A DNA stretch of 63,817 bases, filler included, from Octopus bimaculoides (lineage: Eukaryota), in NCBI RefSeq assembly GCF_001194135.2. It is 6 parts of 5 records of this genome, joined end to end, with 100 filler letters (N's around TTAATTAATTAA, not from the genome) between each part and the next. Parts side by side here need not be neighbours in the genome. Positions count along the whole stretch, not along the records: positions 1 to 27,376 come from NC_068984.1; 5 more parts are not named here. One strand, given 5' to 3'. The translations under genes and the position numbers were made by a program. Positions 5,755-23,633 of the stretch are shown one piece after another (position 1 is the first letter of the stretch; every line of letters begins with the position of its first letter). A model generated the notes under the pieces. That model searched no databases and was not told where the DNA came from. It saw only the letters and a program-made list of their open reading frames with translations.

Positions 5755-7699
5755 GCACATCACAGTGGGGAAATGGGACAATAACCACCACCACCACCAC
5801 AATTGCTGTAAAACCACCCAGTCACAAAACTCACTACCAGTATTACTTACTCTTGATGTTTATATTTAACTAAGCCTATTAAATATAACAATATTTACAG
5901 TGGATTAAAGAGCTAACACAATTTTTAAAGTAGGCTCTTTATTCATCTCTCCACTATTTTCATTCAATTCCTTTCTCCTCAGAACAAACAATTTTGAATC
6001 TTCACCTTGATCATATCTTTTCTGCTGGTGTTAACTGAAAATTTAAGGCATCAGCCATCATGATCTCAGAAAGCCTGCAAAGATCAGAGGCATTGTCCTT
6101 TTCTAGACTCAGCAAGTAAAAAAGTGACATTCAATTTTTAATTTCCATAATATATTTTAACCATAATATAAAACAGTAATTGCACATCATAGAAATTTTA
6201 TTATAAAATTATATGTTCTATAATATAGTTAATAATGTTTTGTATCTTATAATAATTCTGCTTATTCCTCTGTTACTTAGCCTGTCCATAACACTTTCAT
6301 GTGGTTAGTTGAAAGGAAAGACGAAGGGCAAGAGAAAAAGAGGGTAAGGTGAAGACTGAGAGAGAAAGAGTGAGAGTGCTATAAAATTGTGCATAAAGTA
6401 TATAATATAAAGTGTATATATAAAGTACATTAAGTAATCACCATGTTTCAATTACCTTCACTTTTTAATGAATAGCAGATGAGCAATTATCTTTTGATAC
6501 AGACACAACATAGACTATACTCTCAGATTTTTTGGATGAAGTTTTCAGAAATAACCCAATAAGTTTACCATTAACTCCATAAAATATTCTCAGGTCCTAC
6601 TAGTTTGAATACAAATGATACTCAAATAATAATATAATTTTATACAAAGAAAAAAAAAACCCAATGCAATCACAAAAGCTTGTAATTTATTTCAACATAA
6701 TATTTATGGGCACTGGAGGATTTCTGTTTGTGACTAATACAGATGACACCAAAACTAATAGCATAATCCATAGATGCCTTTGAAGTAATAATAAAAATGG
6801 TATGAAAGATAAAAGATGGCATTGAAAAAGTGGATGATTAGAAAAAGAATAAAGTGCATAATTAGTCAGATACTAATATATTGAAAGCCTTCTTGCTGTA
6901 CATGCAGGAACATATTTTAAAATGATGGGCAATTAATAACTAGCCTTATGAGTAATCATTGTAAAGTTATATTATTTGTGATGAAAGCAGCAGATATTTT
7001 GAGAATTATGTGAACTTTTGATTCAATTGTAGTAACTGTCTTTTAGGAGAATTGTGTTTAATTATATAATTGCAGCTAAAAGCATTTTTGCTAGATGAAC
7101 ATAGAATAAAACTAGATGAAAAAAATACAAGAGGAAACAAGAATAATTTGTAAAATGGCATAAATAAAGAAATGTTGACAGTCAATCCCAGACCACTAAA
7201 ATATAAAGTTCCCTGGTGGTATAAACTTAGAGCATAAATGGCATGGTATTTTCTTATCCTATCAACAACAAAAGCAGCAACAACATTAATATCCACAGCA
7301 AGAAAACAAAGAATATGAATAAGAATATTAGCAAATTTTTATTGGCTCAAAATAGGGATAGTTCAAAGACTAAATAAGAATGAAAACTAAAGTTAAAAAA
7401 GAAACACTTAGAGTTTACATTCATTAAAAGGGTCAGGTCAGCAATAACAATAAAAGCTTTAATAAACAGATGAGAAAAACAATAATAACAATGTAGAAAA
7501 ACAGTAATAAAAGTAATAACTTGTAGAGACATTTAACATACTTGAATGGTCAGAATGCTATCCATTGGCACAGACTAAATAACCATGGATTAAATCAAAT
7601 AAATTATGAAAGTATAGAAAAATAACTGTGTAAACAAATGAAGTATTAATTTGCTTATAAAACTGACTGATTTATAAGTTACATAATCAAGGTATTACA

Positions 7700-8640
7700 A
7701 ATATTGGCCAGGTGATCATCAAACATCCTAACTGCCTTTTCCCCTCTGAATTTCAATGAAATATTTGCCTTGGTCTTCTTAACGTACGACCGACCCACTG
7801 ATTACATTTTGCTATTTCTTGGTGATGGATTCCTTGGTGTTTGACATTCACAGGTTTTTAATATCTAATTTTTAGAATGGTTTTGAGGCACCTTTTTTGT
7901 GACTGGAACTTTCTGAGGAGATTTGTTCATTTGTCATGATTTAGTAACCTGTAGTTGGATGGTTTAATGTTGTTAAAGAAAATTCTCAGCTTACTATGCC
8001 TGGACAAAGCCTTGAAGCCTGACTAACTTTTCAAAACTCAGATGTCCTTTTCTGTACTTTCAGTTACAGTACATGCATGAAACACTTAATTTCATTCAAC
8101 ATGTAATTTTCATGGTTTGAATTTTTATGATTTCTGTCTTCCAAATGTTAACCCTCAGTTTAGTTTTCACTACTTTCTCTGTTAGCTTGTCTGTCTTTCT
8201 CTGTATGTCTTGAACTTTTGAGACCTCAAGAAATGTCTTGATTCTCTAAGCCAGGGGTTTTCAAACTGTGGTCCGCGGACCACAGGGAGTCCGCAAGGAC
8301 AAGACAGGGGGTCCGTGGACAGCAAATACTTTTTATGGGCAATTTGATTTTATATATGTTTTTTAATCGAAATCTTTTAATTGACAATAAACCTATTTGT
8401 TAAATACTGTTAAATAAATAAATGAAAAAATATATGTTATTTTAAGCAAATGTTTATGTATAAATTTCATAAGTGTTTATCAAGGGGTCTCTAAGGTAAA
8501 GCCTGAAATATAAAGGGGTCCACGAGTCAAAAAGTTTGAAAACCCCTGCTCTAAGCTACTTTTCTACCTATTATATGCTTTCTCTTTTGGTCTATGTAGT
8601 TTGATGCAATATCAAGAAGATCATTGACAATAATAAACAT
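7700..8640 (-). mobile_element. Degraded RTE-type LINE RT C-terminal fragment, interrupted by a hAT MITE
   Basis: Hand translation of the minus strand gives ...KRCLKTILKIRY*...NQWVGRTLRRP, resembling the RTE CLR.IL.I.W and WIGHTLR motifs, with many stops. Confidence 0.5.
8252..8548. mobile_element. hAT (Charlie-like) MITE, 297 bp
   Basis: Perfect 16-bp TIRs CAGGGGTTTTCAAACT and perfect 8-bp TSD CTCTAAGC (8244-8251 and 8549-8556). Confidence 0.95.
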
Positions 8641-9027
8641 CCAGCTTTTACCTCAAGAGGTTTCAGCCATTAGGCAACACTTGACAAGAGGCGTCTTTAT
8701 AAAGCTTCTGAATGAACATTTTGAGGATTCCACTGTGGTGGAATTGACCCTAAATTACTTTGCTATGGTGGTCATCAATTTGTAGTACAGAAATGCATAT
8801 TATTGAGTAAATAACAAATCGGTACTATCATTTCCTGTTCAATAATTACATATTTATTATTTTTCATTGTGTCAGTTTAACCAAACAGCTTCTGACAAAT
8901 TACAAATACTAGATGTTTCCAAGTGTTGCAATCAGTTGTTCTTTTTGCTGTTGCTCACTGATCAAACCTAATCAAGCAGATCTATGATTGAAACATTCTA
9001 GCTGTGACCATCCTGTATTTTCATATA

Positions 9028-9500
9028 TCATTTACCACATTCTCCAATGTAACTTTGTTTTGGGATGATATATAGTGATTTGAAGGAGGGTTGGATGCTA
9101 TCTTTTGCAGGTTGACTGATTGAAAAGAGGATCCTTGCTTGCATGTAAGAAGTATGATTGTCTAATTGCTCAAGGACATCATCTGCATAAAGGAATATGC
9201 GGTTGAATGGAGGCTGGGAGTTGATGAAGTTTATCGCAGAATATGCAAAGATATCAAGTTTTGAAGAACTCATTAGCAAATTGCCAATAAATAAACTTTT
9301 GCTGAAAATGTCAACAGAAATCTTGTGGAGTGGCCTTTTAAAGACACCCACACCACCAAAATGACTGGATTATTCTCCTCCATGTATAAAGTATGTAACA
9401 TTTCCCGCACTATTTTTCTGATCAACATGGTCATATTCAGAATAGGCTGTGTAAATGTATATATCTGAGGATGGCTTGGAAGCAAGGCCACTTGTTCAAT
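9028..9500 (-). mobile_element. Possible decayed non-LTR RT fragment
   Basis: The RIFLYADDVL (YADD) motif is present in a broken frame. No other RT motif was confidently recognised. Confidence 0.35.
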
Positions 9501-9814
9501 AACGTTAAGACACTAGATTTTCATGTTGCCAACAGTAAGACCAGCACTTTTGGGTTGTATGCAGCTGATCCCATATCTGCAGTTTAATCTAAGACCAAAA
9601 CATGTCAGGAGTAGTCCTTCTTAGCTGCCAGGAAACATTATAATAATATTAATATTATCCTTTCATCACTGTGTACTTATCTGTAATTAGCTTTTTAATG
9701 CTCAAAGTATTAGATATATTCACACTAGCTTAATTATTGCTTTTATGTACATAGCATTTCAGTAATTTCTCTGAATAATTTACTTTCTAAAAGGCAAAAA
9801 GGCAATTTGTAGTA

Positions 9815-10433
9815 CCGTATATACTTGGCTATAAGTTGCACTTTTTTCCCTGAAATTTTTGCCTGAAGTTGGGGGTGTGACTTTTAAGCGTATCCTATAA
9901 AAATATCTTTAGATATTTTCTAGGTACAAGCCATGTTAGAAGTTCCAACACTTGGAATAATTGAAAAAACCCGAACCGCTAATTCTGAAGTCAAGAAGTA
10001 CACGGAAGATAATCTTTAGATATTTCTTTATATCTTTCATTACTTCTGTTAGTATGAAATAAACAATTAATTTTAAAAAAGTGAGTTTAATGCTTGTTTT
10101 TTTTTTGTACCATAACTGTCTTTCTTTAATTCGATATAAGGCATAAATCAGAAAGTAAAGGGAAAGTATCGAAGCAATTAAGTCTCAGTATGATGAACAA
10201 GTCAGCTAGCATAATCAGCGGTTTGTAAAATGCATGGGCTTAATGGGATAACAGTTGTTGTAAGTCATCTTCAGCTTACTGAAAGCTCACGAACAACAAC
10301 TATGTCTGTGTGATTCCTAATAGAACTTTGCTCTTCAACATCAAAAATGTTGCTGCAACTTATAGTCAGGTCAGTGATAAAATTCCTGATCTGAACCAAG
10401 TTGGAGGTGCATCTTATAGATGAGTATATATGG
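9815..10433. mobile_element. Tc1/mariner-superfamily (pogo-like) non-autonomous element, about 620 bp
   Basis: Imperfect ~21-bp TIRs (CCGTATATACTTGGCTATAAG and CTTATAGATGAGTATATATGG) with TA dinucleotides at 9813-9814 and 10434-10435. Confidence 0.75.
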
Positions 10434-10522
10434 TATTTATAGTTGTGTATATATGGTATTTTGATTTTAGAAAATAAATGTTAACATACATACACACCAC
10501 CCATATGTGTGTGTGTGTTCCT

Positions 10523-10528
10523 TTTATT
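10523..10528 (-). terminator. Candidate polyadenylation signal (AATAAA) of the HtrL-like gene
   Basis: AATAAA on the minus strand about 30 nt after the TAA stop. The context is AT-rich, so chance occurrence is possible. Confidence 0.35.
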
Positions 10529-10558
10529 TTATATACATATATGTACATATTAATCAAA

Positions 10559-11452
10559 TTAGTTCTTTCCAGCTGCATAACATACATAACCCAATTCAAA
10601 CCAACCTGATTTGTAAAGTTGAAGCTTTGTTTCTGGTTTATGTTTATCCAAATACATTCCATATATGATCTGTTGATCTGTACTTATTAGTTTTATAGAC
10701 AAAGACTTGTTAACAAAGTTCAAATACTCTTGAGTAAATTTGTACAAAACATCATATTTACCAAGATTGCTAGCACCTCCTATCCACACCATATTGTCAT
10801 AAATAATGTCTTTATATGTTACATCCTTCTGGAAATCATCTACCTGGGCATAGGCAACTTTTGTATCATCAAAATCTGTAGGTTTTGCCAATTTAAATTT
10901 TGGGTCATCATGGAGATATCGAAAAAGTCCAATATCTAACCACATAAAGTATTTAGTATGAAAATAGTTCTTTCTTATAACCTGGTTAAGAAGTTCAAAT
11001 TTTGCATGCATGGCACAAGAATATCCAGGTACAACAGTATTGGGAAGATGTTTTGGGTAATCAGGCTGTGTATATATTTGAGAAATATTTTCTTGTATCT
11101 TAAATGACCACAATTCCTTCTTGTTTATCAGAAATGTCTTGGTTCGTTCTTTAGGAAACTTTTCCCTTAACTTTTGAAAATATTTGTATGCAATCATATC
11201 ATTTGTATAAAAAATTACATTATTGGTCATGTTGCGAAATACAGACATCCATTTGTAATAGATATTTGGGTTATACTGATGTCTAAAAACTCCTTTTGCA
11301 AAGGATCCTATATTGAAATAAGCAGTCAAGACTGTGATTTCATTGGAAAGATTCATAGTCTTCTTTGAAAGGTCACTTTTAAAAGCGAGAATGTTTTCCT
11401 CGATTGATGATATTTCTGTAGAGTTTTGAATAACATATTCAATTTGAAGATC
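10559..11452 (-). CDS. htrL: HtrL/YibB (WlaTC/HtrL) family putative glycosyltransferase, terminal coding exon of 297 codons plus stop; upstream exon(s) not located
   Basis: Colinear family motifs TVLTAYFNIG, NNVIFYT, PGYSCAMHAKF, WLDIG, WIGGA, TDQ and GWFEL match recalled E. coli HtrL motifs (TIITAYFDIG, WIDFG, IIGGA, DDQ, KWFDL). The frame stays open 32 codons upstream of the ORF-track Met, to an acceptor TATTTATTTAACAG|GAT at 11452. No stops or frameshifts. Confidence 0.9.
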   Translation of the reverse strand, partial: DLQIEYVIQNSTEISSIEENILAFKSDLSKKTMNLSNEITVLTAYFNIGSFAKGVFRHQYNPNIYYKWMSVFRNMTNNVIFYTNDMIAYKYFQKLREKFPKERTKTFLINKKELWSFKIQENISQIYTQPDYPKHLPNTVVPGYSCAMHAKFELLNQVIRKNYFHTKYFMWLDIGLFRYLHDDPKFKLAKPTDFDDTKVAYAQVDDFQKDVTYKDIIYDNMVWIGGASNLGKYDVLYKFTQEYLNFVNKSLSIKLISTDQQIIYGMYLDKHKPETKLQLYKSGWFELGYVCYAAGKN

Positions 11453-11723
11453 CTGTTAAATAAATAATATATAAAATTATGAAGGACCAAAATAATATGC
11501 AAAATAAATGAATAAATAAATAAATAAAGTTTATATTTTACTGGGGCATATTCACTGTGATACAAATCTTAAATCTGCACATTCCTTTAAAATTTGTTTG
11601 TTATTAGTGCTCTGGTCCATATTGAAGCAGTAGATTTCTTGATTCTGCTGTAATGGAACTTCAGACTATTTCCCATAAATTAATTGTCTTAACAATGACT
11701 TAACAATTGAGTAAATGAGTCTA

Positions 11724-11853
11724 GGACATTTACCCCCACCCCATGGACAATTACCCCTGAGAACAACAGATGATGATTTAAAGCTTCTTAATATATTGGA
11801 GAGGGTGTAATTAACCAAGTGGGGTAATTGTCCTGGGGGTGAGTAATTGTCCT
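11724..11853. mobile_element. Small MITE-like relic with inverted subterminal repeats
   Basis: Two GGACA(A/T)TTACCCC copies face two G(G/A)GTAATTGTCC copies. Confidence 0.55.
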
Positions 11854-12613
11854 GATATTAACTAAATTATTATCCTGTACCTAAGCTATTTATGATAATA
11901 AAATAGAAGGAAAGAGTAGATTGACCTTTCTCTATTCTTATAATTTCTTGTCACAGTTGACAATTCCAGGAGTATGTGATGTGTCTTTGAGTGTATGCTT
12001 AATTGCTGCCTAGCTTTGCCATGTCCACTGCCATTTATTATGCACACAAATGACGCGAAATCTCTGAAGGATGTAACCCACTGTACGGCTATAAACACAG
12101 CAGCATCAACAAGTTACACCTCTTTCAACCAGTTGCATGCACAATGGCTCATTGGATGATAGGGTGTACAGACATAACAATAGCTATTACAAATTACACT
12201 GTCTTTAAACTGGTTGCATGCTCAAACCTTTTCTGTAGACTAGCTCTGCAGTTAGTCACATGTCAATAGCAATAACACATTGCTTTCTACATCCTACACA
12301 TATTTTGGTACAAGGAACTGACAATGTGAGTATATAATAAAATATAACGTATATTATCACTTGTAATAACCAACTTTACATAAAAATTTCGGAATGCTAT
12401 TTTAGAATAAATATACTCTTTTTATATATGAATTGCCTCCTAATTTGCAGAATGTTATTTTTGCATCATTAGTCATATTGCTTAATTTCATAAAAATCCT
12501 CCTATAGGTTATTGTGAAATAGTTGGAGGAAAGGAAGTGATGTTGGTCAAGCCAATGTAAAAATATTGGGCAATTCAAGCTAATGTATCAATGAAATCAT
12601 TTTTCTTTCTTAC

Positions 12614-12648
<35 letters not shown>

Positions 12649-12679
12649 CATTTTTATGGATTTAAATAGCTGCAGGAAT

Positions 12680-12820
12680 AGCTGTGTAGGGAAGAAGTTT
12701 GCTTTGTAACCACATGTTTTCGGTTCAGTCCCACTGTACAACACCTTGAGCAAGTGTCTTGTACTATAGCCTCAGATTAATCAATGCTTTGTGAATGAAT
12801 TTGGTAGACAGGAACTGTGT
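12680..12820 (+). mobile_element. tRNA-derived SINE head (CORE-like family A)
   Basis: GCTGTGTAGGGAAGAAGTTTGCTT...GGTTCAGTCCCACTG...CCTTGAGCAAGTGTCTT, a family repeated many times in this window. Confidence 0.75.
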
Positions 12821-13679
12821 ATATATACTTACATACAAAGGAGTATCTACAAGCTATAGACCAATGCTTGGTCATGGCATATAAACATGTTTGTGTGTGT
12901 GCATGTGCATGTGTCTGTGTGCATATATACTTATGTTGTTACTACAGGTGTGAAGTGTATGTATGTGTGTGTATGTGAGTGCATGAATGCGTATGTATAC
13001 TGTGACATAGACCAATGGTTAACAGTACCAGCACCAACTATCCACTAAAAAATCAATACTTTGGGGTCAGCTAGTCTCTATCTTTACCCATCCCAGTTAA
13101 ATATTCGTAACAACCATTTTTGACCCTTAACAACAGTAATTATCTGTTCTTGTCTCTCCCTCTTTCTTCCCCATTTTGTATTATTCCCACTCCCACATAT
13201 TTGACCTCATCTTTCTATTTCTTACTTCTTCAAACATTTGTTTTCTTTCTTCTGTTCTTCCAGTTTCACTATTCATTTCAAGTCACATCTGCAGTGAATT
13301 AACTTGGAAATTTTAATTCTATGCTACCTTCATATAATTAAGGTATCCTCAGCCTGGTGATTAGTTAAGTTGAGTATTCTTCATTGAATAATTATTACAT
13401 CAGAGAATCAGCTAGTTAAGAAACATATGTTGCCTGGATTTTATCCATTCCACTCCCTCAATTTGGACTTTTAGTCATATTCATAGTAAGTCTAGTAGCT
13501 AACTGTGAATTATACAGAAACTTTCAGTTTATTGAATGTCTTAGTAATTTTGATATTGGAAAAAGTGTGTAACATTTGACACCGATAGATTGTTATGGCT
13601 CCTGACTATACACTGTCCACTCTTGTTTTCTATATTTTCCATGGACTGCTTGAAGCTTACAAACTATCTCCACTTGAGT

Positions 13680-14340
13680 CCCTAACATTCCTTTTCCATG
13701 CTGGCATGGTTTGGATAGTTTGACAGAAGCTAGCTAGGCTGGGAGCCACACCAGCCTCCATTCTCTGTTTTGGCATGGTTTCTACAACTTGATGCACTTC
13801 CTAATGCCATCTATTTTACAGGGTGTAGTGGATGCTTTTTACATGGCTCTAGCATCAGTGCATTCTATGTGGCACCATCACTGACAGGGTCCCCAAGTAA
13901 CTTGCAAGATGAAGCCCTGTCAACTGAGAGTGAGGGGTAGTATTGAGGTGTTAGGCTAGTGGCTTTGTGTCAGTAGAGATTAAAGGTATAGAGGGACAGA
14001 GATAGGTGTCTTGCTGTAGAATAAATTCCTGGATACCCCAGTTGGAAAAGAAAGGAGAATGAGTGAGCGAGTAAGATAAAGAGAGTGCAGACAAGTGAGT
14101 GTTAATGATGGAGAACAGCACAAAAAGTAGATGATTGGTGGAGACAGTAGGCAGGGGAAGATAATGAGAAATAGAATGGTTTGGGGGTGGAGGACGGAAG
14201 GTAACTGAGAAAGTGGAGGAATGTAGAACATGCCTATTCTGCTGTCAGGTGATAGAGAAGTGATGGGTGTTAGGGGGTGAAATGTGGGAGAGAAATGGTT
14301 GATGGTGCAGAGAGGATAGAGGTGGGGGTGAGGCAAAGCT
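13680..14340 (-). mobile_element. Long SINE-like composite repeat (family C); similar copy about 17205-17760
   Basis: Degenerate GATGC(C)CTTCCTAATGCCA core and a shared GGTGTCTTGCTGTAGA segment in both copies. Confidence 0.6.
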
Positions 14341-14394
14341 TCTCACAGACAAGCATTACCAAGGTGGTTTAGGATATAAATTCTGGTGTGGTGG

Positions 14395-14830
14395 ATGAGT
14401 CTTCTTGGGTATAACAAGGTGCCATATATCTCAGTCCTTTGTCATCTTCTTTGTGAGGTCCAGTGTCTTGAGATCAGCCATCAATACTTTGCCCACTGTC
14501 TTCCTGGGTCACCCTCTTCTCCAAGTTTGACCCGCTTTAAGTGATCAGCACTTCTTTATGCAACTGTTCACATCTATATGCATCACATGATTAAACCAGT
14601 GCTGTCTTCTCTATTGCAAACTACATTTAATTCCTCTTATGTCTAACTTTTCACTCAATACACTAGTGCTCTGTTGCACATGCACAAAGACACTGTACAT
14701 CGAGCAGAACATACTAGCTTCATTCCTCTCTAATCTTTGCATGTCCTCTGCATTCAGGGAACCCGTTTCACTACCATATGACATTGGTGTTCACACACAT
14801 GCATCATTCAATCATTCAATTTTCCTTTCG

Positions 14831-14865
<35 letters not shown>

Positions 14866-14945
14866 AGACCTTTGGTTGCCAACAGAGGCAAAAGCTCTTT
14901 GAATTTTCTCCAACCTATTTTTATTCTAGCTATTACACCTTTAGT
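14395..14945 (-). mobile_element. RTE LINE, RT C-terminal fragment (decayed)
   Basis: Minus strand resembles RTE ...LYDACV...GRPRKTW..V..DL..L.L...MT.D, and is paralogous to 18050-18420. Confidence 0.75.
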
Positions 14946-15221
14946 ACATCTGCCTCTACTGCTAATAAGTTACCTAGGTAGCAGAAATTATCTACAACTT
15001 CTGGAGAACATTCGAGGGGGTGTGCAATTTTAAAAAATCAATTTCCTATGTGTCTGTAGATTTTATGGCTACTGTGAGAGATAGGAAAATGGAGGAGAGG
15101 GATGTGGGTGACACCTGTTGAGAGGAGGACGTGTAGTAGTTTGGGAGGGATGATACAGTTGACAAGGGGAAGAGAGAGAGATGACGTATTTGGGTAGGCT
15201 GAAAGAGTAAGGGATAGAGAG

Positions 15222-15256
<35 letters not shown>

Positions 15257-16665
15257 TAGTGCATGAGGAGAGATAAATTGGTGATTTGAGGGAGGATGGA
15301 GTTGTCAATGTAACATGCAAATATAAATCCACATGTAGAACACACGCACACAGACAAATACACATAATATTAAAATAACTAACAAAGGATGGTGAGTTTG
15401 TTAGTTCAAATACATACAGCTGTTTCCAGTATTTGTTCTCAACATATAGGCTTAAACTTTATACTTTTTTAATCCAGAAGGTCAGTAAGTGCTGATACCT
15501 AATGAACGAACAGTTACTTATCCTGCTATAGACTAAGCAGAATTATAACACACACACACACACACAGATACACAGACAGACACACACATACACATACACA
15601 CACACACAAGCACAGACATACACACACAGAGACATACAAACACATACACACAGAGACACATACACAACAACAAAATATGTATACTCTACTACACAATGCA
15701 GTTTGAATTAGAAGAACTGAAAATAATTGTAAATATTTGAAAGCTTTTGTTTTGACAGGAAGTTATAAGAATGTAAACACTTTGGTTCTATACTTCTGTT
15801 GAACAATAACAAGGGCATTGTGAGACATGACAGACATGTTTCACAATTTGATTATCACTCATACACACATACATGTATATACATACTCACACACACACAC
15901 ACACACACATGCATACAGAGGTTAATTTATGCATATATGGCATTATGGAGTACTAAAGAAGACCTGCCCACCAACATACACATGGCAAAACATGCATTGA
16001 AATAAGAGTAGCGTTAGAATATTGAATCTATGGAGTTGTAGCCGGGCAGTTGAATTATTTCATCCCAGGGTAACAGCACACTTGCGCTGTGTTCCTCTGT
16101 CATTTAGAAGCTGGTGGTGGAAGAATACACTGGACGGCTTCTACCCAGCCGGACTGGTGTGAATCTGAAGAGAACGACTTTAGTTGCTGTCCAGATGCCG
16201 AAAAGCAAATGCCATTATTGACTGTCTAGTGACTGTTGGTCATACGGAACAGCACATTGATATACTGCTTATATACTCACATGGGCAACAACTCAATGCA
16301 TTTTCTATTGCATGCAATGTGTGGATATTATTACTGACTATCTAGTTTAGTAAGTGTGTTAACTCCTCTCCGCCTACATCACTCAAGTGGATTCTCATCT
16401 CTATCATCACACACATTCTGATACACAGCAATAGAAATCACAATTATTTGGCTTGGTTCATTTGTTATACTGTGTTAACTTCTACCTATATAAATCTGTG
16501 ATATGTTAACCTAAAGAAAAAAAATGCCTTCTGATCTAACTTTATTCCAACATACACTCATGTACAACACTTGTATCTTAACTACATACTAAAGTGGTTA
16601 TGCAACACCTTGATAGCCTAGTAAACTCCTGTTACAGAGTCACTTTATGTTTATGTGTATGTATA

Positions 16666-17210
16666 CGAGGTCTGATCAATAAGTATCCAAACGTAGTAAT
16701 GAGTAATGTAGTAATGAGCTGTAGTAATGAGGCTATAGTAACGAGCTGTAGTAATGAGGCTAAAGCATACAGACTGAAGCCATTTGGCAAAGATTGACCT
16801 TGAACTATGCTGTGCAAGCATACTAAGTTTTAACATTCTAGTTCACTTCTGCTGTTTACAGCAGTGCTTGGAAGGAAGGTGTGTAGCGTGTGATCATCAC
16901 ATTGACCATGACAAAGAAAGTTGTCATGGCAATACCTACTCAGAGGCCTACACAAAGCTGCAGAAAGCATATGGAGAGGGGATGTATGAACCGTACACAA
17001 GTGTACGAGTAGTTCAGATGTTTCCAAGATGGCCCAAAAAGTATCAATATTGATGAACACTCTGGGAGACCAGCAACCGGCAGAACTGAGAAAACCATCA
17101 CAGATGTGCATGCAGCTGTGAGAGGAAATTGTCAAATCACCATCCATGAGTTATCAGAGGATGTGCAGATTAGTTACGGTTCAGTTCAATCTATTACCAC
17201 TGAAGTTTTG
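16666..17210 (+). mobile_element. mariner transposon 5' half (TIR plus HTH DNA-binding region), truncated
   Basis: TA|CGAGGTCTGATCAATAAGTATCC terminus. Broken-frame translation ...SEAYTKLQKAYGE.CMNRTQVYE*FRCFQDG...DEHSGRPAT...QITIHELSEDVQISYGSVQSI. Confidence 0.85.
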
Positions 17211-18049
17211 GCAAGGGTTTTACAGCTAGATGCCCTTCGAAACGCCAACAACTTTACAATATGGATTGGGTGCTTTTAAGTGGCGCCTGCACTGAGAGGG
17301 TCACCAAGTACTTGCAAGACAAAAAAAAATCTCTTTTGAGAGGGAATTGGAGGAGGTAATCTTGTGTCAGGTGATGAAAGGTTATAGTGAGACAGAAAAA
17401 CAGAAACAGGTGTCTTGCTGTAGAGAAGATACAAGGTTATCCAGCCCGGGGTGGGGGTGGGGGAAGAGGAGATCAGAAATGATGACAGAAGCAGGTGCAC
17501 TGCAACAAAGGAAATACATGGTTACCCAACTTGAGGGAAGTGCAGGGGAAGGAGAGAGAGACTGGGTGACAGCAGGACAGAGATGGTGCTAAAGTGCCGG
17601 ACATGCTCAAAAGGGATGGGGATCAGGATATAAATGGGATGGTTGAGTAAAGGAAGAAAGAGATATAGTTGATGGCAAGTGCCAGGGCATACCCTTGAGG
17701 TTCAAAGGTCATAAGATAAATGGCAGTATATTGCGATAAAGCATGATTAGAGTGTGCAGAGAGGTGGGGGGTGGCAAAAACCTGGGTATATATAGTGTTG
17801 GGGGGGGGTGCTACTGGATAGCAATGATACAGAGGAACAGGGCCATGAGAACAGGATTTGGGAGTGAGAGGTAGGTATAATGTATGAAGGAAGAAATGTG
17901 AGGAAGAGAAATGTAAAGATGTAGATTGGTTTGTTGGGGCAGTGTGTGTGAAAAGTTTTTTTGTTATGTGTTGGTGGAATACGCAGATCAGGAGCTAGCA
18001 GATATCAATGATACAGTGAGACAGGGTGTGTGGGTGGAACACACAAGTT

Positions 18050-18335
18050 GAGGGCTTTCAGTGATTGGCGCTTCTTTATGCAGCTGTCCTCATTCATACA
18101 CATCACATGTCCAAACCAATGTAGTTTTCTCTCTTGCATACTACATGTAATTTCTCTCATGCCTAATTTCTTTCTCAATACATCTGCACTTTGTTGTATA
18201 TGCGCACATCCAACAGAGCATACTACCTTCATTTCTCTCCAGTCTACACATGTCTTCTGCATTCAGACCCCATGTCTCACTACCATGGAGTATAGCCATT
18301 CGCACACAAACATCATACAGTCTACCTTTCACTCT

Positions 18336-18372
<37 letters not shown>

Positions 18373-19262
18373 TCCTTTTGTTGCCAACTGAGGTAGTAGC
18401 TCTCTGAACTTCCTCCACCCAATTCTTATCTTAAAAACAAGACTTTCAGTGCATCATCCACCATTGCTAATTTAGTCACCTAGGTAACAAAAACTATCTA
18501 TAACCTTAAGAGAGCCTCTTGGGCATTTGAGAGAATCTTGGTCGTGTGTGCTCTTAGTGCTTATTGTTTCTGCACATACATACTGTTCCTGCCACATACA
18601 AAGACGACTTTATCTGTTAATCTACTTATGATTCCTCTGCACCTCTTATGTGTCCATAGTTTACACTGGGTGCAGAAACTCCTTTCCTACTTATTGAGCA
18701 GGGCCATTTACTTGATGGAAAGAGAGTTTCATCATTTTTCTTACTAACAACAACTTTGGTCTTTGTTAGGTTGACTTTAAGGCCCTTTGATTCCAGATTT
18801 TGTTTCCATACTTGGAATTTCTTCTCCAATTCTGCTAAAGATTCTGCAGTAAGAGCAAGGTCATCAGTATATAGCAGTTCCCACGGGCACCCAGTTTTGA
18901 ATTCCTCTGTTATGGCCTGGAGGACTATAATGAATAAGAGTGGGCTGAGAACTGAGCCTGGTGAACCCCTACCTGTATGCTAAATTTATCACTGTATTCA
19001 TGGCCAACTCTCACCTTACTGACAACACCACAGCACATGGCTTGTACAGCTTTAACAAGTCATTCCTCTACTCCTAACTTCCTTAGAGATCACCATGTAA
19101 CAGAGTAGAGAACTTTGTCGAAAGCTTTCTTCAGGTTGACGAAAGCTAAGTACAATGGCTTACTTTTGACCAAGTGATTTTCCTACAGTTGTCTCACTAG
19201 GAAGATGGAATTTGTGGTACTCTTCCCAGGTACAAAATCAAACTGCATCTCATCTAGTTTAA
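18050..19262 (-). mobile_element. RTE LINE reverse transcriptase region (pseudogenised)
   Basis: KLDEMQFDFVPGKSTTNSIFLVRQL, GCPWELLYTDDLALTAESLAELEKKFQVWKQNLESKGLKVNL, LRVKGRLYDVCVR, LHGSETW, LHWFGHV. Confidence 0.92.
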
Positions 19263-19854
19263 TTCTATTTCTAATCAATTGAACTATAACTCTCTCTCTC
19301 TCTGTATATATACATATATATTTATATATATAAATGTATATGTGTGTGTGTATGTGTCTTATGTATAGATGTGTATATATATATATTATATATATAAGGC
19401 TGGCCCATCCTAATCTTTTTTGTTAATTATATGCAATTATGGAATGCAGAGGGGGTAAGGGTGAGATGGAAAGAGTAGGGGAAAAATTGAAAAAGAGAGA
19501 TAAAGCTTGGAAGAAAGGAGGGGCTGAGGATTTTTGAAAGATATGTGTGGAAGGTTCTTCAACATGAAACCATTTGGTAACATGAATTGGCTGCCTTGTG
19601 CCTAGAGTAAAAAAAAATATTTCTTTACACAAATTTACCTGTTAAATAGAACCTGTTTCATGAAACAGTCATTTTTAATTAAATATCCAAGTTAGTTTGT
19701 GATAAAAATTTTGGACAAGTTAAAACTTTGTGTATGTTTATGCTTACATTTCTTTAATTAGAGTTCTTTCTGTTTGCTATATACAAGCTGTTGCTTGAAT
19801 TTATACACATATCGCAATACAATTTAGAGACAATGTATATTTGTATTTCCATTA

Positions 19855-20360
19855 TTGACAGAATTGTTAGTACACTGGAAAAATGCTTAGCAGCATTTCT
19901 TCTGATTCTTTCATCCTGAGTTCAAATTTGACTGAGGTGAAATTTGCCTTTCATTTCTTCAGAGCTGATGAAATAAATATCAGCTAAGCATTGGGTTGAT
20001 ATAATTGACTAATTCTCTCTTCACAAACTGTTGGTCTTGTGCCAAAGTTTGAGACAATTACTGTTGTTATTAGTGTAATGAATGGTAGAATTGATAGAGT
20101 AGTAGATAGAATACTCTACACAACTTAATTTCAATATTTTACTCCTTGAATTCAAATTAGATTTGACCATTTGTTTGTTCAGGGTGGTAAGCTGGCAAAA
20201 TGCTTAGGAGCATTTCTTCTGCCTCTTTATATTCTGAGTCCAAATCCAGCTGAGGTCAACTTGGCCTTTCTTTCTTACAATCTTGATAAAATAAAGTACC
20301 AGTCAAGTACTGGAGTTGATGTAATTAACTTGTCCCTTTCCCTGAAAATTGCTAACCTTC
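19855..20360 (+). mobile_element. Two degenerate SINEs of family B
   Basis: AAATGCTTAGC...TGAGTTCAAA...GAGGT...GCCTTTC...GATAAAATAAAGTACCAG motifs. Confidence 0.7.
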
Positions 20361-20742
20361 AATCCTGCAATAGACCAGCATTCTGTTCAGAGGGCATATT
20401 GTGATCTCAGTCACTCTTAACTAGCCTTATGAATCCTATTGCTCAAGAAAAAAAAGAAGAAAACTCATTTGTTCATGGTTTGTAAAACAAGAATCACTAA
20501 AGTACACATCAATATAATTAATTGTACCCTTTCCTCACAATTTATGGCTTTGTGTCTATATATGAAACCATTAATATTATTGTTACATTAAAAAAAAAGT
20601 TACTTAAAATATTGTTACATTTTACTGATTTAAACATTGTTGGAAAATGAAACCAATTGCAAATGTTTCTTTGTGTTGACATTTATATAAAGAAAATTTA
20701 GCTGATGCCATATAAAAAGCACCCACTACACCCTGTAAAGTA

Positions 20743-22690
20743 TTGGGTCACCCCATAAATAATGCAATTTTTTCAATTACATAAACTAAGTCAGAGGGAG
20801 ACAGGATAAACTACTTGCATCAGCTTGCAATAAAAGTAGGCAGTAATTTTACCTGGTACTTATTCTTAGTGCAAGTTTTGAAGAGTACAGTTCGATTTTA
20901 ACAGTTATTTTTCCAAAGCTATAGTGAAAATGATGAAGGAGCATATTTGGCATATTTTGCTTTATGAGTTCAATCATCATCATCATCATCGTCGTTTAAC
21001 GTCCGCTTTCCATGCTAGCATGGGTTGGACGATTTGACTGAGGACTGGTGAAACCAGATGGCTACACCAGGCTCCAATCTGATTTGGCAGAGTTTCTACA
21101 GCTGCATGCCCTTCCTAACGCCAACCACTCAGAGAGTGTAGTGGGTGCTTTTTATGTGCCACCAGCATGAAGGCCAGTCAGGTGGTACTGACAACGGCCA
21201 CGCTCAAAATGGTGTATTTTATGTGCCACCCGCACAAGAGCCAGTCCAGGGGCACTGGCAATGATCTCGCTCGAAAGTCCTTACACATGCCGCGGGCACA
21301 GGTACCATCATAATTTCGCTTCCGCTTGCCCCAATAAGTCTTCGCAAGCTGAGTTTCGTGTCCAATGAGGGAGACGACGTTNNNNNNNNNNNNNNNNNNN
21401 NNNNNNNNNNNNNNNNNNNNNNNNNNNNNNNNNNNNNNNNNNNGACGTCAAATTTAACTCGATTTCGATTTCACTTACCTCAACAGGTCTTCGCAAGTGG
21501 AGTTTAGTGTCCAATTTAACTTGATTTCGATTTCACTTGCCTCAACAGGTCTTTGCAAGTGGAGTTTAGTGTCCAATGAAGGAAGGAAGGTACGCATAAG
21601 TGGACTGGCTGAGGCCTTAGATTTAGGTCAATAAAGGTGATAATGCAATGAAAAGTGTGAGGAATATTAATGCAGTATTTGGGGATTGGATATTAAGCAT
21701 AAGCCAGTATCAGTGGTGGTTCCAGAAATTCCAAGCCAGAAACTACAGCCTGGAAGACAAGCCTCATCCTGGAAGATCTGTAGAGCTCAACAAGGATGTC
21801 TTGCAGACCTGGGTGGAACAAAATCCCATTGTAACTGTTGAGGAACTAGCAGAGAAGCTTGGATTCGGTCATTCAATCATTCATTGACACTTGTATGCCA
21901 TCTGAAAAGTCAGCAAATTTGGTCAATGGGTTCCTCACAAACTTTCCGAGTCTAATCACGTGTGGAGAGTGAATGTGTGCTCTTCTTTGCTGTCACATCT
22001 CATGAATGAACCTTTTTTGAACTTAATAGTGACTGGTGACAAGAAATGAGTTTTCTATAAGAATGTCAAGTGCCAAAAACAGTGGGTAGGGAAAGGAGAA
22101 ACACCAGCACCCCAGGCTAAAGAAGGTTTTCACCCACATAAGGTGTTGCTATCTATTTGGTGGGATATTAAAGGCTTAGTCCACTTTGAACATTTAAATC
22201 CAAACCAAACAATAAAAAAGATCAACTGTGAGCAGCTTGTGCAGTTTAAGTCAGTGCTAGAAGAAAAACAATCATCTTTGGTTTCAAGACAAAAGGTGTT
22301 CTTCTATCAGGATAATGCTCAGCCACATACAGTGAGGATGACATTCCAAAGGCTGGAGCAGTTTGAATGGGAATCGATGCCCCCACCACCATATTTGCCG
22401 GACATTGCCCCATCTGATTATCATTTATTCCGCACCCTTCCAAATCATTTGGATGAAAAAAAATATGAATTCTGTAGGTCAGAACAGTACTGGAGGAGCA
22501 TTTTTCATTATAGACAAGTGAATTTTGGAAGCGGTTGGAGGTGGGGGGGGGGCTTGCAAGTCTACCAGATAGATGAAAGAGCATTGTACAAAATGAAGGA
22601 GAATATATTTTAGATTAAAAAAGAACTTTGTTCATCTCAATTTTGAAAAATAAAGTATAAAAAAACCACATTATTTATGGAATGACCCAA
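20743..22690 (+). mobile_element. Full-length but inactivated mariner transposon, interrupted by a SINE at 20975-21627
   Basis: TIRs TTGGGTCA(CC/TT)CCATAAATAATG with TA TSDs at 20741-20742 and 22691-22692. Transposase motifs WVPHKL, VTGD, QDNA and PYLPDIAPSDY, with stops and frameshifts. Confidence 0.93.
20975..21627 (-). mobile_element. Family C SINE-like element with internal 62-bp repeats, inserted in the mariner ORF
   Basis: (CAT)n tail end, TGCCCTTCCTAACGCCAACC core and TCAAT TSD (20970-20974 and 21628-21632). Close relative of 48465-49100. Confidence 0.88.
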
Positions 22691-22692
22691 TA

Positions 22693-22845
22693 CTTGATGT
22701 TAGGGGTGGCAGCCAGTCATAGAAATCATGCCAAAGTCGACAGCAGAGCTTGATGAAGTCATCTGACTTGCCAGTTCCTATCAAACTATCCAACCCATAG
22801 CACCATGGAAAACCGATGTTAAATGATGATGATGATGACAAAACT
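22693..22845 (+). mobile_element. Older family C SINE split by the mariner insertion (5' part at about 20700-20740)
   Basis: AAAAGCACCCACTACACCCTGTAAAG[TA] left of the mariner rejoins CTTGATGTTAGGGGTGGCAGCCAG...GTTAAATGATGATG to its right. Confidence 0.75.

Positions 22846-23602: not shown

Positions 23603-23633
<31 letters not shown>

What the first reader, a model, noticed from the sequence alone, without database searches (positions are those of the whole stretch)
10559..11452. Intact bacterial-type HtrL/YibB glycosyltransferase-like gene in an animal genome
Seen: the only clean long ORF in the window, with the whole domain in one exon, embedded without assembly gaps among host SINEs and MITEs. 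Known: HtrL/YibB lies at the E. coli LPS (rfa/waa) locus, the family is functionally uncharacterised and only putatively a glycosyltransferase, and it is mainly bacterial. Inference: a horizontally acquired or patchily retained enzyme now adapted to the secretory pathway (NST, NLS, NMT, NIS and NKS sequons), possibly making an undescribed mucus or surface glycan. The acidic DDQ motif appears as TDQ.
Basis: partly seen in the sequence, partly recalled or inferred. Interest (0 to 1): 0.75.

Follow-up and report, generated by a model that had tools for sequence, protein, structure and literature searches.

The report
Octopus HtrL-like Golgi glycosyltransferase gene
The open reading frame is the last exon of an ordinary, already annotated octopus gene (Octopus bimaculoides LOC106879412) for a membrane-anchored, glycosyltransferase-fold enzyme of unknown specificity, which belongs to an old, multi-copy animal branch of the "bacterial" HtrL/YibB family and is not a recent bacterial import.

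Summary
A 297-codon open frame lies on the minus strand at 11452..10559. It matches Pfam HtrL_YibB above threshold (48.5 bits against a cut-off of 24.1).

It is not a single-exon gene. RNA contigs from four runs splice 11452 to a 47-nt exon at 22987..22941, and from there to an exon outside the window. The mRNA ends at a poly(A) site near 7320.

The window is 100% identical to O. bimaculoides chromosome CM046604.1. The gene is LOC106879412 (XP_014784452.1, 341 aa), with a short N-terminus, a 19-residue signal anchor, a stem and the HtrL_YibB domain.

The gene is under purifying selection. Against the syntenic O. vulgaris ortholog, dN/dS is 0.26 in the domain and dS is 0.09.

Homologs occur as several octopus paralogs and in cuttlefish, gastropods, bivalves, annelids, nematodes and cnidarians. 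Gammaproteobacterial YibB is about 22% identical and forms a separate clade with 100% bootstrap support. Recent horizontal transfer and contamination are therefore refuted. An ancient inter-domain origin stays open.

The AlphaFold2 model (pLDDT 92) has a GT-A fold. Its nearest solved structures are GT6 enzymes, and giant-virus proteins match it more closely. The canonical DXD motif is reduced to one invariant Asp.

The likely function is a lumenal sugar-nucleotide glycosyltransferase with unknown donor and acceptor. Interest is low to moderate.

The parts
10562..11452 (-). Coding part of the terminal exon (coding exon 3). It encodes 297 codons, residues 45-341 of XP_014784452.1: the stem region followed by the complete HtrL_YibB / GT-A-fold domain.
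   Evidence: Translation. Pfam PF09612 at 48.5 bits. 100% tblastn match to P0346 residues 45-341. AF2 model with pLDDT 92.3.
10559..10561 (-). TAA stop codon
   Evidence: The same stop after GYVCYAAGKN is present in the O. vulgaris genome.
11453..11475 (-). 3' splice site of intron 2: a polypyrimidine tract followed by the AG at 11454..11453.
   Evidence: Sequence. RNA contigs of 4 runs stop matching exactly at 11452 and continue with the exon 2 sequence. RNA depth upstream of the site is zero.
7320..10558 (-). 3' UTR of about 3.2 kb, ending at a poly(A) site near 7320. It contains a high-copy SINE-like repeat at about 8260-8525.
   Evidence: Continuous RNA contigs cover 11452 down to about 7320-7437 in 4 runs. 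One contig carries a run of 19 T on the + strand before 7320, which is the poly(A) tail. There is no RNA at 6600-7000.
7338..7343 (-). AATAAA polyadenylation signal, 18 nt upstream of the cleavage site
   Evidence: Sequence together with the poly(A) loose end.
22941..22987 (-). Coding exon 2, 47 nt, encoding (D)QWYIEERNFNPLDLY in the stem region. It is flanked by the acceptor cAG| and the donor |GTAAGT.
   Evidence: Sequence. RNA contigs in 3 runs (X2, X3, X19) cover exactly 22940-22989. The loose end at 11452 is the reverse complement of this exon's 3' end. tblastn match to P0346 residues 29-44.
11453..22940 (-). Intron 2 (11,488 nt). It holds a mariner transposase fragment, SINE-like repeats and a 62-N assembly gap at 21382-21443.
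   Evidence: Splice junction in RNA contigs. N run. PF01359 hit.
22988..27376 (-). The 3' part of intron 1 (about 22 kb in all). Exon 1 lies 17.8 kb beyond the window end. It encodes MRPIQKWFIIISILGIISCILIMILKVQ, that is, the start codon and the signal anchor.
   Evidence: The RNA loose end at 22989 is not found in the window. It is found at L006 10054-10083 in the O. bimaculoides chromosome, to which the window is 100% identical.
23682..23711 (-). Part of a minor alternative upstream exon, joined to exon 2 in one RNA run. It lies inside a reverse-transcriptase (LINE-like) fragment.
   Evidence: Loose end of an X3 contig at depth 4, located. RVT_1 hit at 23586-24146.

Best explanation
The ORF is the last and largest coding exon of Octopus bimaculoides LOC106879412. 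This is a vertically inherited, expressed gene with three coding exons. It is one of a small cluster of octopod paralogs.

It encodes a 341-aa type II membrane protein:
- a 6-residue cytosolic N-terminus (MRPIQK);
- a 19-residue signal anchor (WFIIISILGIISCILIMIL);
- a stem of about 45 residues;
- a domain of about 260 residues with a GT-A (nucleotide-diphospho-sugar transferase) fold, of the HtrL_YibB family.

Inferred mechanism: the anchor places the catalytic domain in the Golgi/ER lumen. There it transfers a sugar from a nucleotide-sugar donor to a glycan, glycoprotein or glycolipid acceptor.

The nucleotide-sugar pocket is probably formed by residues invariant from E. coli to octopus (exon numbering). 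These are the beta1 'TAYF' strand (T40), Y65, K151 and the W171-x-D173-x-G175 turn at the end of the central strand. That turn occupies the usual DXD position, but only one Asp is kept. R178 is invariant across the animal clade. The D259-Q260 pair at a helix N-terminus is kept in nearly all animal members and in E. coli HtrL. With a single Asp, the enzyme may bind metal weakly or be metal-independent, with K151 and R178 neutralising the diphosphate.

Shown: gene structure, expression, selection, family membership, fold, topology signal and phylogenetic position. Inferred: enzymatic activity, lumenal location and residue roles. Unknown: donor, acceptor and stereochemistry.

The confidence given covers the whole statement. 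The gene-identity and vertical-inheritance part is near certain (above 0.95). The glycosyltransferase activity is about 0.65.
For: Family: PF09612 at 48.5 bits against a cut-off of 24.1. All 40 aligned relatives hit PF09612 and no other family recurrently.

Gene structure and expression:
- RNA contigs of 4 runs from 3 studies join 11452 to 22941, and 22987 to an exon outside the window.
- The poly(A) tail is at about 7320, with AATAAA at 7343..7338.

Identity: the window is 100% identical to O. bimaculoides CM046604.1. XP_014784452.1 (P0346) matches exons 2 and 3 exactly and supplies the anchor.

Host origin:
- DNA runs from 3 further studies hold 90-100% of the ORF's words.
- The locus is collinear with O. 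vulgaris; most aligned non-coding blocks are 87-96% identical.
- The exon is 95.6% identical to O. vulgaris with no indel.
- GC is 0.31, the same as the flanks.

Selection: dN/dS is 0.37 overall and 0.26 in the domain, with dS 0.093. The excess of synonymous changes gives P = 6e-4.

Conservation: every invariant and nearly invariant column of the 40-sequence alignment is kept in this protein.

Fold:
- The AF2 model has pLDDT 92.3 and pTM 0.89.
- Foldseek against PDB returns GT-A enzymes as top hits: bovine alpha-1,3-GalT, human ABO GTA/GTB and Bacteroides BoGT6a (E 1e-6, probability 1.0, TM 0.40-0.55).
- Foldseek against BFVD returns giant-virus glycosyltransferase-like proteins (E 1e-15, TMq 0.65).

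Topology: strong N-terminal hydrophobic 17-mers occur in 61 of 109 full-length animal relatives and in 0 of 87 bacterial ones.

Phylogeny: the split between bacteria and animals has bootstrap 1.0. Window plus O. vulgaris has 1.0, and the octopod cluster 0.91-1.0.
Against: - No member of the family has a demonstrated activity in the literature I could search. A. baumannii HtrL is listed as 'hypothetical' and E. coli HtrL as function unknown.
- There is no sequence-level link to any CAZy-type GT family.
- Similarity to solved GT-A structures is only moderate (TM 0.40-0.55, rmsd 6-9 A).
- The canonical DXD is absent; the motif reads LDIG.
- N-glycosylation sequons are not enriched beyond chance (P = 0.06).
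- Tissue of expression could not be read, because run metadata were coded.
- I could not inspect model coordinates, so the assignment of D173 and D259-Q260 to the active site rests on secondary-structure position and conservation only.
Confidence: 0.65

Rival explanations
1. Recent horizontal transfer: a bacterial htrL/yibB gene entered the cephalopod (or octopod) lineage and was domesticated.
For: The Pfam family is named and seeded from bacterial LPS-locus proteins, and E. coli htrL sits beside rfaD-waaFCL. The whole domain lies in a single exon.
Against: - Homologs at 28-50% identity occur in cuttlefish, gastropods, bivalves, annelids, nematodes and cnidarians.
- The best sampled bacterial relatives are about 22% identical and form a separate clade with 100% bootstrap support and a long branch.
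- The octopus gene groups with other octopod copies, and every other named relative in the tree is an animal.
- It has two further coding exons, introns of 11 and 22 kb, a eukaryotic signal anchor and host-like base composition.
Confidence: 0.02
2. Ancient inter-domain transfer with patchy retention: the animal HtrL_YibB clade descends from a single old transfer before the cnidarian-bilaterian split. The partner could be a bacterium or a giant virus, in either direction. The family was then lost in many lineages. The octopus gene is a vertical descendant of that event. This is compatible with the best explanation for the gene itself; it concerns only the deep origin.
For: - Named animal hits come only from cnidarians, molluscs, annelids and nematodes. 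No vertebrate or arthropod name appeared among the hits I could identify.
- The family is abundant in Gammaproteobacteria.
- Giant viruses (pithovirus-like, Bodo saltans virus, Solumvirus) have the closest predicted structures, closer than any solved cellular GT.
- The single-exon catalytic domain is compatible with an intron-less ancestor.
Against: - It could not be tested properly. Most of the 476 representative hits are unnamed metagenome or transcriptome proteins.
- Only gammaproteobacterial bacteria were sampled for the tree.
- Non-animal eukaryotes were not identified or excluded.
- A vertical origin in early eukaryotes followed by losses predicts the same picture.
Confidence: 0.3
3. Bacterial or other contamination, or an assembly artefact, placed in an octopus scaffold.
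For: The family name is bacterial. The window contains two N gaps.
Against: - The ORF is in DNA runs of the same organism from three studies (2015, 2022, 2025) and in RNA runs from three studies.
- It is spliced to host exons and polyadenylated.
- It is collinear over about 27 kb with O. vulgaris, including introns.
- Its GC matches the flanks.
- The nearest gap is more than 8 kb away.
Confidence: 0.005
4. A decaying or non-functional young duplicate: the copy is transcribed but no longer makes a working enzyme.
For: - It is a member of a tandem paralog cluster. LOC106877989 lies about 66 kb away on the same chromosome.
- The stem region evolves fast (8 nonsynonymous against 1 synonymous change).
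- RNA contig depth is modest, at 5-60.
Against: - The frame is intact in O. bimaculoides, O. vulgaris and O. sinensis.
- There are no indels in 891 nt, whereas introns have many.
- Domain dN/dS is 0.26, with P = 6e-4 against neutrality.
- All family-invariant residues are retained.
- Splicing and polyadenylation are correct.
Confidence: 0.04
5. A GT-A-like fold that is not a glycosyltransferase. Examples would be a secreted or anchored binding protein, a hydrolase, another group transferase, or an immune effector, as was speculated for the C. elegans PF09612 protein HTRL-1.
For: - No biochemical activity is known for any family member.
- DXD is non-canonical.
- The eLife paper PMC8989417 groups HTRL-1 with antimicrobial defence genes, on expression and a PANTHER pattern.
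Against: - The strict conservation of a small set of polar residues from E. coli to octopus (T40, K53, Y65, N77, R96, K151, D173) points to catalysis or ligand binding rather than a scaffold.
- The bacterial members sit in LPS/LOS core loci among glycosyltransferases.
- NCBI names relatives 'WlaTC/HtrL family glycosyltransferase'.
- All top structural neighbours are nucleotide-sugar transferases.
Confidence: 0.15

Closest known systems
E. coli HtrL / YibB (b3618) and the 'WlaTC/HtrL family glycosyltransferase' proteins of Gammaproteobacteria (Pfam PF09612, TIGR02192)
   Same: It is homologous over the whole domain: 22% identity over 278 residues (E 3e-8 pairwise), with Pfam model positions 2-261 of 267 covered. 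Shared invariant positions include the TAYF strand, K, Y, N, R, W-x-D-x-G and the D-Q motif. The size of the catalytic domain is the same.
   Different: - It is far below the equivalog cut-offs (62.8 against 264.9 bits; 48.8 against 342).
- It forms a separate clade (bootstrap 1.0).
- The octopus protein has an N-terminal signal anchor and stem, which none of 87 bacterial members has.
- It is intron-containing and is not in an LPS locus.
- It has TDQQ in place of DDDQ.
Uncharacterised animal HtrL_YibB proteins, e.g. O. bimaculoides LOC106877989, O. sinensis LOC115211102, LOC115210944 and LOC115210785, Haliotis LOC124147819, Aplysia LOC101862011, Capitella CAPTEDRAFT_199538, Exaiptasia AIPGENE29247 and Nematostella LOC125562987
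   Same: They share the same architecture: signal anchor, stem and one HtrL_YibB domain. Identity is 28-91%. They share the motifs YSCAMHAK, WLDIGxFR and NTDQQVIY. The window gene IS one of these: XP_014784452.1.
   Different: There is nothing categorical. This copy, with its O. vulgaris and O. sinensis orthologs, is a distinct octopodid paralog lineage with a shorter stem.
C. elegans HTRL-1 (T11F9.12)
   Same: It carries a PF09612 domain and is predicted to be secreted. It is the only animal family member I found discussed in the literature (PMC8989417).
   Different: - It is 736 aa and is described there as nematode-specific.
- It is pharynx-restricted and was interpreted as saposin-related.
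- It was not compared here at sequence level.
- The paper's statement that the domain is otherwise only bacterial is contradicted.
CAZy family GT6 retaining glycosyltransferases (bovine alpha-1,3-GalT 1g8o, human ABO GTA/GTB, Bacteroides ovatus BoGT6a 4cj8)
   Same: They are the best solved-structure matches to the AF2 model (Foldseek E 1e-6, probability 1.0). They have a GT-A fold of similar size, and the animal members are type II Golgi proteins. From memory only, as a lead: GT6 has a catalytic Glu in an 'HDES' motif at a helix start, reminiscent of TDQQ, and BoGT6a also lacks a canonical DXD.
   Different: - TM-scores are only 0.40-0.55, rmsd is 6-9 A and identity is 10-14%.
- There is no sequence-profile match to any PDB chain or to Pfam Glyco_transf_6.
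- The residue-level correspondence was not tested.
- This is resemblance at fold level, not family membership.
Giant-virus (NCLDV) glycosyltransferase-like proteins: Pithovirus LCPAC202 A0A481Z629, Bodo saltans virus A0A2H4UUS7, Solumvirus A0A3G5AJT7
   Same: They are the closest predicted structures overall (E 1e-15 to 1e-13, TMq 0.63-0.66, rmsd 3.7-5). They are probably true family members.
   Different: Identity is 12-19%. They are larger multi-domain proteins (377-625 aa). Their Pfam membership was not tested here.

Membership tests
Pfam PF09612 HtrL_YibB | Score against the family HMM above the curated gathering threshold, over most of the model | tested here: met
   48.5 bits against 24.1, E 1.2e-12, model positions 2-261 of 267. 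All 40 aligned relatives also match.
Pfam PF09612 HtrL_YibB | Conserved residues shared with the founding member, E. coli HtrL | tested here: met
   18 columns are invariant across E. coli HtrL and 8 animal proteins. They include T40, G49, K53, Y65, N77, R96, K151, W171-D173-G175, P191 and G226 (window-exon numbering). The D-Q of DDDQ/TDQQ is retained.
YibB proper (NCBIfam equivalogs TIGR02192 / NF008462) | Score above the equivalog cut-off (same function as E. coli YibB) | tested here: not met
   62.8 against 264.9 bits and 48.8 against 342 bits. It is a distant homolog, not an ortholog or equivalog.
YibB proper (NCBIfam equivalogs TIGR02192 / NF008462) | Location in an LPS/LOS core biosynthesis locus | tested here: not met
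   The E. coli gene lies next to rfaD-waaF-waaC-waaL. The octopus gene lies among transposon remnants, with a paralog about 66 kb away.
GT-A fold nucleotide-sugar glycosyltransferases | Single Rossmann-like alpha/beta/alpha domain superposable on solved GT-A enzymes | tested here: met
   The AF2 model has pLDDT 92.3 and pTM 0.89. 150 PDB matches have E <= 0.001, and the top 50 are all GT6 GT-A enzymes (probability 1.0, TM 0.40-0.55). The viral matches are annotated glycosyltransferases.
GT-A fold nucleotide-sugar glycosyltransferases | DXD metal-binding motif after the central beta-strand | tested here: not met
   Strand 166-172 is followed by D173-I-G175 (WLDIG; WIDFG in E. coli). Only one Asp is present, and it is invariant. 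Some GT-A families also lack DXD, so this lowers but does not exclude the functional analogy.
GT-A fold nucleotide-sugar glycosyltransferases | Demonstrated transfer of a sugar from a nucleotide-sugar donor | not testable with these tools
   No biochemical report for any PF09612 member was found in the paper library.
CAZy GT6 | Sequence-profile similarity to GT6 (Pfam Glyco_transf_6 or GT6 PDB chains) | tested here: not met
   A profile of 40 relatives finds no PDB chain at E <= 10. No Glyco_transf_6 hit appears at E <= 10 in any of the 40 members.
CAZy GT6 | Catalytic Glu (E317 in alpha3GalT, E303 in GTA) at the equivalent structural position | not tested
   Model coordinates and residue-level structural alignments were not available. 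The TDQQ/HDES resemblance is from memory only.
Type II Golgi/ER membrane glycosyltransferase architecture | Short cytosolic N-terminus, one uncleaved signal anchor, stem, C-terminal catalytic domain | tested here: met
   XP_014784452.1 has MRPIQK, then WFIIISILGIISCILIMIL, then the stem. Exon 1 was found in the chromosome, and its last 10 codons were confirmed by RNA contigs. Paralogs score a Kyte-Doolittle mean of 2.7-2.9 over 17 residues. Localisation itself was not tested.
Horizontally transferred gene (recent, bacterial donor) | Closest relatives are bacterial, and homologs are absent from sister animal lineages | tested here: not met
   The closest relatives are animal proteins at 28-91% identity in four phyla. 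Bacteria are about 22% identical and form a separate clade.

The most novel reading that the evidence does not exclude
The animal HtrL_YibB proteins are a glycosyltransferase family that I found neither biochemically characterised nor tied to any known GT family. Its absence from CAZy rests on my own recollection. The family shares ancestry with bacterial LPS-core enzymes and giant-virus enzymes through an ancient inter-domain transfer. It was lost from many animal lineages; no vertebrate or arthropod name appeared among the identified hits. It expanded in molluscs, with at least 5 copies in octopus. The octopod-specific paralog in this window would make a lineage-specific surface or mucus glycan linkage using an unusual single-Asp, possibly metal-independent, GT-A active site.
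Probability: 0.2. Interest if true: 0.5.

Novelty: already known. Interest (0 to 1): 0.22.

Why it matters
For the scan, this removes a false lead. A 'bacterial' Pfam name on an animal ORF is not evidence of horizontal transfer. This gene is an annotated RefSeq locus (LOC106879412) in a family spread over at least four animal phyla.

The residual value is for glycobiology. PF09612 has no member with a known activity in any organism. The animal branch has the full look of Golgi glycosyltransferases: signal anchor, stem and GT-A fold. It is multi-copy in molluscs. The family's fold assignment and its invariant residues (single Asp at the DXD position, K151, R178, D259-Q260) give concrete mutagenesis targets. 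An activity found for one member would also annotate E. coli HtrL, the A. baumannii OCL5 HtrL and C. elegans HTRL-1.

The data also correct a statement in the literature (PMC8989417) that the domain occurs, outside nematodes, only in bacteria.

Tried and rejected
1. I searched the window for the TM-encoding first exon by pattern and hydrophobicity and by the RNA loose-end sequence. It is absent. It was later located 17.8 kb beyond the window in the chromosome.

2. The search for related loci with the 40-sequence alignment, in genome contigs and viral contigs, failed for lack of a sufficiently conserved 7-10 column stretch. Bacterial sampling therefore came only from the profile search seeded with E. 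coli HtrL and is limited to Gammaproteobacteria.

4. I suspected that ENA hits of 264-272 aa on Mb-size contigs were bacterial genomes. Their neighbourhoods are gene-poor, with tandem HtrL copies, which marks them as eukaryotic contigs.

5. I suspected that this paralog lineage had lost its start codon and anchor, because O. vulgaris CAI9720700.1 starts at MTLKAQ and no in-frame ATG precedes the anchor in that exon. This was rejected. O. sinensis and O. bimaculoides models, and the O. bimaculoides genome, carry MRPIQK plus the anchor.

6. The C-terminal 35 residues of O. vulgaris CAI9720700.1 map to window 6777..6673. I rejected this as a real coding exon. There is no RNA there, poly(A) is at 7320, and the O. 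vulgaris genome itself encodes ...GYVCYAAGKN* in the main exon.

7. The sequon enrichment is not significant.

8. The first bootstrap script timed out. I redid it with a faster distance routine.

9. A second round of cluster look-ups to name deep-branching representatives returned almost only unnamed metagenome or transcriptome proteins.
Full report
**What is there.**
On the minus strand an open frame runs from 11452 to the TAA at 10561..10559: 297 sense codons, with the first ATG at 11356. It is the longest stop-free frame in the window: 298 codons, against a mean of 126 and a maximum of 256 in 200 shuffles. The next ORF is 230 aa, in a retroelement-like GC-rich block.

Its product matches Pfam PF09612 HtrL_YibB at 48.5 bits (gathering score 24.1, E 1.2e-12) over model positions 2-261 of 267. 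It is far below the NCBIfam equivalog cut-offs for YibB itself (62.8 against 264.9 bits).

The observation and the family call are therefore confirmed. The protein is a distant homolog of bacterial YibB, not an ortholog.

**Gene structure and expression.**
The frame starts directly after a polypyrimidine tract and AG (…tttatttaacAG|GAT), not at a start codon. Logan contigs of four RNA runs from three studies of one organism cover 11452 downwards without a break and stop matching exactly at 11452. Their continuation is the reverse complement of a 47-nt exon at 22987..22941 (acceptor cAG|, donor |GTAAGT).

That exon is in turn joined to a sequence that is not in the window. RNA depth is zero immediately upstream of 11452.

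Downstream, coverage continues for 3.2 kb past the stop. It ends at about 7320, where one contig carries a poly(A) tail, 18 nt after an AATAAA at 7343..7338.

Intron 2 is 11.5 kb long and contains one of the window's two N gaps (21382-21443; the other is at 2289-2388). The claim 'without assembly gaps' therefore holds only for the exon's immediate surroundings.

**Identity of the gene.**
The 265-aa ATG-to-stop product is in the protein collection, in the same 90% cluster as XP_014784452.1, 'uncharacterized protein LOC106879412 [Octopus bimaculoides]' (341 aa).

That protein reads MRPIQKWFIIISILGIISCILIMILKVQ|DQWYIEERNFNPLDLY|DLQIEY…AAGKN. It matches exons 2 and 3 of the window exactly. It also matches the ten codons (…CILIMILKVQ) that I had read from the RNA loose end.

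The window is 100% identical to O. bimaculoides chromosome CM046604.1. Exon 1, which carries the ATG, the signal anchor and a GTGAGT donor, lies 17.8 kb beyond the window end. A paralog, LOC106877989 (78% identical), lies about 66 kb away on the same chromosome.

The gene is therefore already annotated, with PF09612 precomputed.

**Host gene, not contaminant.**
DNA runs of the same organism from three studies (2015, 2022, 2025) hold 90-100% of the ORF's sampled words. GC is 0.31, the same as the flanks.

The whole window is collinear with the O. vulgaris locus of CAI9720700.1. Most aligned non-coding blocks are 87-96% identical and are interrupted by many gaps. The coding exon is 95.6% identical over 892 nt without a single indel.

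**Selection.**
The Nei-Gojobori comparison with O. vulgaris gives dS 0.093 and dN 0.034, so dN/dS is 0.37. In the catalytic domain dN/dS is 0.26 (14 synonymous and 16 nonsynonymous changes, where neutrality predicts about 1:4.2; binomial P = 6e-4). The 32-codon stem evolves freely.

Every invariant or nearly invariant column of a 40-sequence family alignment is retained in this protein. The copy is maintained by selection.

**Distribution and phylogeny.**
Named relatives are all animals:
- several octopod paralogs on two chromosomes: O. bimaculoides LOC106877989, LOC106879582 and LOC106879588; O. sinensis LOC115211102, LOC115210944, LOC115210785, LOC115220341 and LOC115220539;
- other cephalopods: Argonauta and the cuttlefish Acanthosepion;
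- gastropods: Haliotis, Patella, Aplysia, Elysia, Nucella, Biomphalaria, Bulinus and Lymnaea;
- bivalves: Mya, Mytilus and Ylistrum;
- annelids: Capitella and Owenia;
- a nematode: Soboliphyme;
- cnidarians: Exaiptasia and Nematostella.

An exhaustive HMMER scan finds 476 50%-identity representatives at E <= 1e-3, of which 185 are at E <= 1e-30. Suspiciously short ENA hits on Mb-size contigs turned out to be single-exon copies in gene-poor eukaryotic contigs, sometimes in tandem.

E. coli HtrL is 22% identical. In neighbour-joining trees the gammaproteobacterial YibB sequences form one clade, separated from all animal sequences (bootstrap 1.0). The window gene pairs with its O. vulgaris ortholog (1.0), inside an octopod cluster (0.91-1.0). 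The octopod copies are not recovered as one clade (bootstrap 0.28), and the deeper order among the animal sequences is unresolved and does not track phyla.

What cannot be decided here is the deep origin of the animal clade. Bacterial sampling was limited to Gammaproteobacteria. Most deep-branching representatives are unnamed. No vertebrate or arthropod name turned up, so ancient transfer with patchy retention remains possible.

**Fold and mechanism.**
AlphaFold2 with the 40-sequence alignment gives a confident model (pLDDT 92.3, pTM 0.89; only the first 12 stem residues are disordered).

Foldseek against the PDB returns 150 matches at E <= 1e-3. The top fifty are all GT-A enzymes of family GT6: bovine alpha-1,3-galactosyltransferase, human ABO GTA/GTB and Bacteroides BoGT6a. 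They have E about 1e-6 and probability 1.0, but TM-scores of only 0.40-0.55.

Predicted giant-virus proteins match better (pithovirus-like, Bodo saltans virus 'glycosyltransferase', Solumvirus), with E 1e-15 and TMq 0.65.

At sequence level there is no link to any solved structure or to any other Pfam GT family. The GT-A assignment therefore rests on structure alone.

The central strand 166-172 ends in W171-L-D173-I-G175 (WIDFG in E. coli). This is the position where GT-A enzymes carry DXD, but only one Asp, an invariant one, is present. T40, K53, Y65, N77, R96 and K151 are also invariant from E. coli to octopus. R178 is invariant within the animal clade. The D259-Q260 of TDQQ (DDDQ in E. coli) starts a helix.

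My best reading is a lumenal, possibly metal-independent, nucleotide-sugar transferase. The residue roles, the donor and the acceptor are inferences or unknown.

**Topology.**
The signal anchor (Kyte-Doolittle mean of about 2.7-2.9 over 17 residues in the octopod copies) is seen in 61 of 109 full-length animal representatives and in none of 87 bacterial proteins. This is the real mark of adaptation to the secretory pathway.

On their own they are not more than chance (2.25 expected, P = 0.06).

**Literature.**
I found no biochemical characterisation of any PF09612 protein. A. baumannii OCL5 HtrL is listed as hypothetical (PMC10327509). The domain is listed among coral lineage-specific domains (PMC6214176). 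C. elegans T11F9.12 was named HTRL-1 because of the domain, with the statement that outside nematodes it occurs only in bacteria (PMC8989417). The present data contradict that statement.

**Verdict.**
The family, the host origin, the secretory adaptation and the putative glycosyltransferase nature hold. Recent horizontal acquisition does not. The object is an annotated member of a known but functionally uncharacterised family. It is ordinary for this genome, with residual interest as an entry point to an unstudied GT-A family.

Noticed in passing
window 2289-2388 and 21382-21443: There are two runs of N (100 and 62 bases), which are assembly gaps. The second lies inside intron 2 of the gene. 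This contradicts 'without assembly gaps' for the window as a whole.
   Followed up: yes
window 1082-2075 vs 2435-3420: An inverted repeat of about 1 kb, 94% identical, flanks the 100-N gap. It could be a foldback-type element or a local assembly artefact around the gap.
   Followed up: no
window 22143-22613 (+): A mariner/Tc1-type transposase fragment (Pfam Transposase_1 PF01359, 34 bits) sits inside intron 2.
   Followed up: partly
window 23586-24146 (+) and 23682-23711: A reverse-transcriptase fragment (RVT_1, 32.9 bits) sits in intron 1. Part of it, on the antisense strand, is used as a minor alternative upstream exon joined to exon 2 in one RNA run at depth about 4.
   Followed up: partly
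window 4000-6000, ORF 5049-5741 (-): A GC-rich block (GC 0.45-0.52, against about 0.31 around it) holds a 230-aa ORF with a CCHC zinc-knuckle-like motif (CFRCQGLHKARDC). It looks like a retroelement gag remnant. It has no Pfam hit at E <= 0.01.
   Followed up: partly
window 6673-6777 (-): The last 35 residues of the O. vulgaris model CAI9720700.1 map here. O. bimaculoides RNA shows no coverage there, and the mRNA ends at about 7320. The O. vulgaris genome itself encodes the normal ...GYVCYAAGKN* end, so that model's C-terminus is probably a mis-annotation.
   Followed up: yes
window 8260-8525, 15100-16400, 18336-19600, 20920-21565, 23504-24149, 26734-27376: Short segments show very high RNA-contig depth (up to 1e5) and many chimeric 'joints'. 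These are high-copy SINE-like or other repeats expressed from many loci. One lies inside the 3' UTR.
   Followed up: no
L005 / L006 (O. bimaculoides CM046604.1, 39.21-39.35 Mb): The paralog LOC106877989 lies about 66 kb from this gene on the same chromosome, on the opposite strand. Further paralogs (LOC106879582 and LOC106879588) are on another chromosome. The family is a small tandem-plus-dispersed expansion in octopods.
   Followed up: partly
L004 3031-3732 and 6001-6819: An unnamed eukaryotic contig from an ENA metagenome assembly carries two HtrL_YibB single-exon copies 2.3 kb apart. Tandem duplication of the family therefore also occurs outside octopods.
   Followed up: no
literature (PMC8989417): The paper naming C. 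elegans HTRL-1 states that PF09612 occurs, outside nematodes, only in a bacterial protein. The mollusc, annelid and cnidarian homologs found here contradict this.
   Followed up: partly
P0006/P0007 (O. sinensis LOC115210785): The stem region of this paralog carries a short precomputed pyruvate-kinase-barrel match (PF00224; the motif 'AQDTKGPEIRTGLLKG', duplicated in isoform X2). This is an odd exon-sized insertion in the stem, perhaps an exonised fragment of a PK gene or pseudogene.
   Followed up: no
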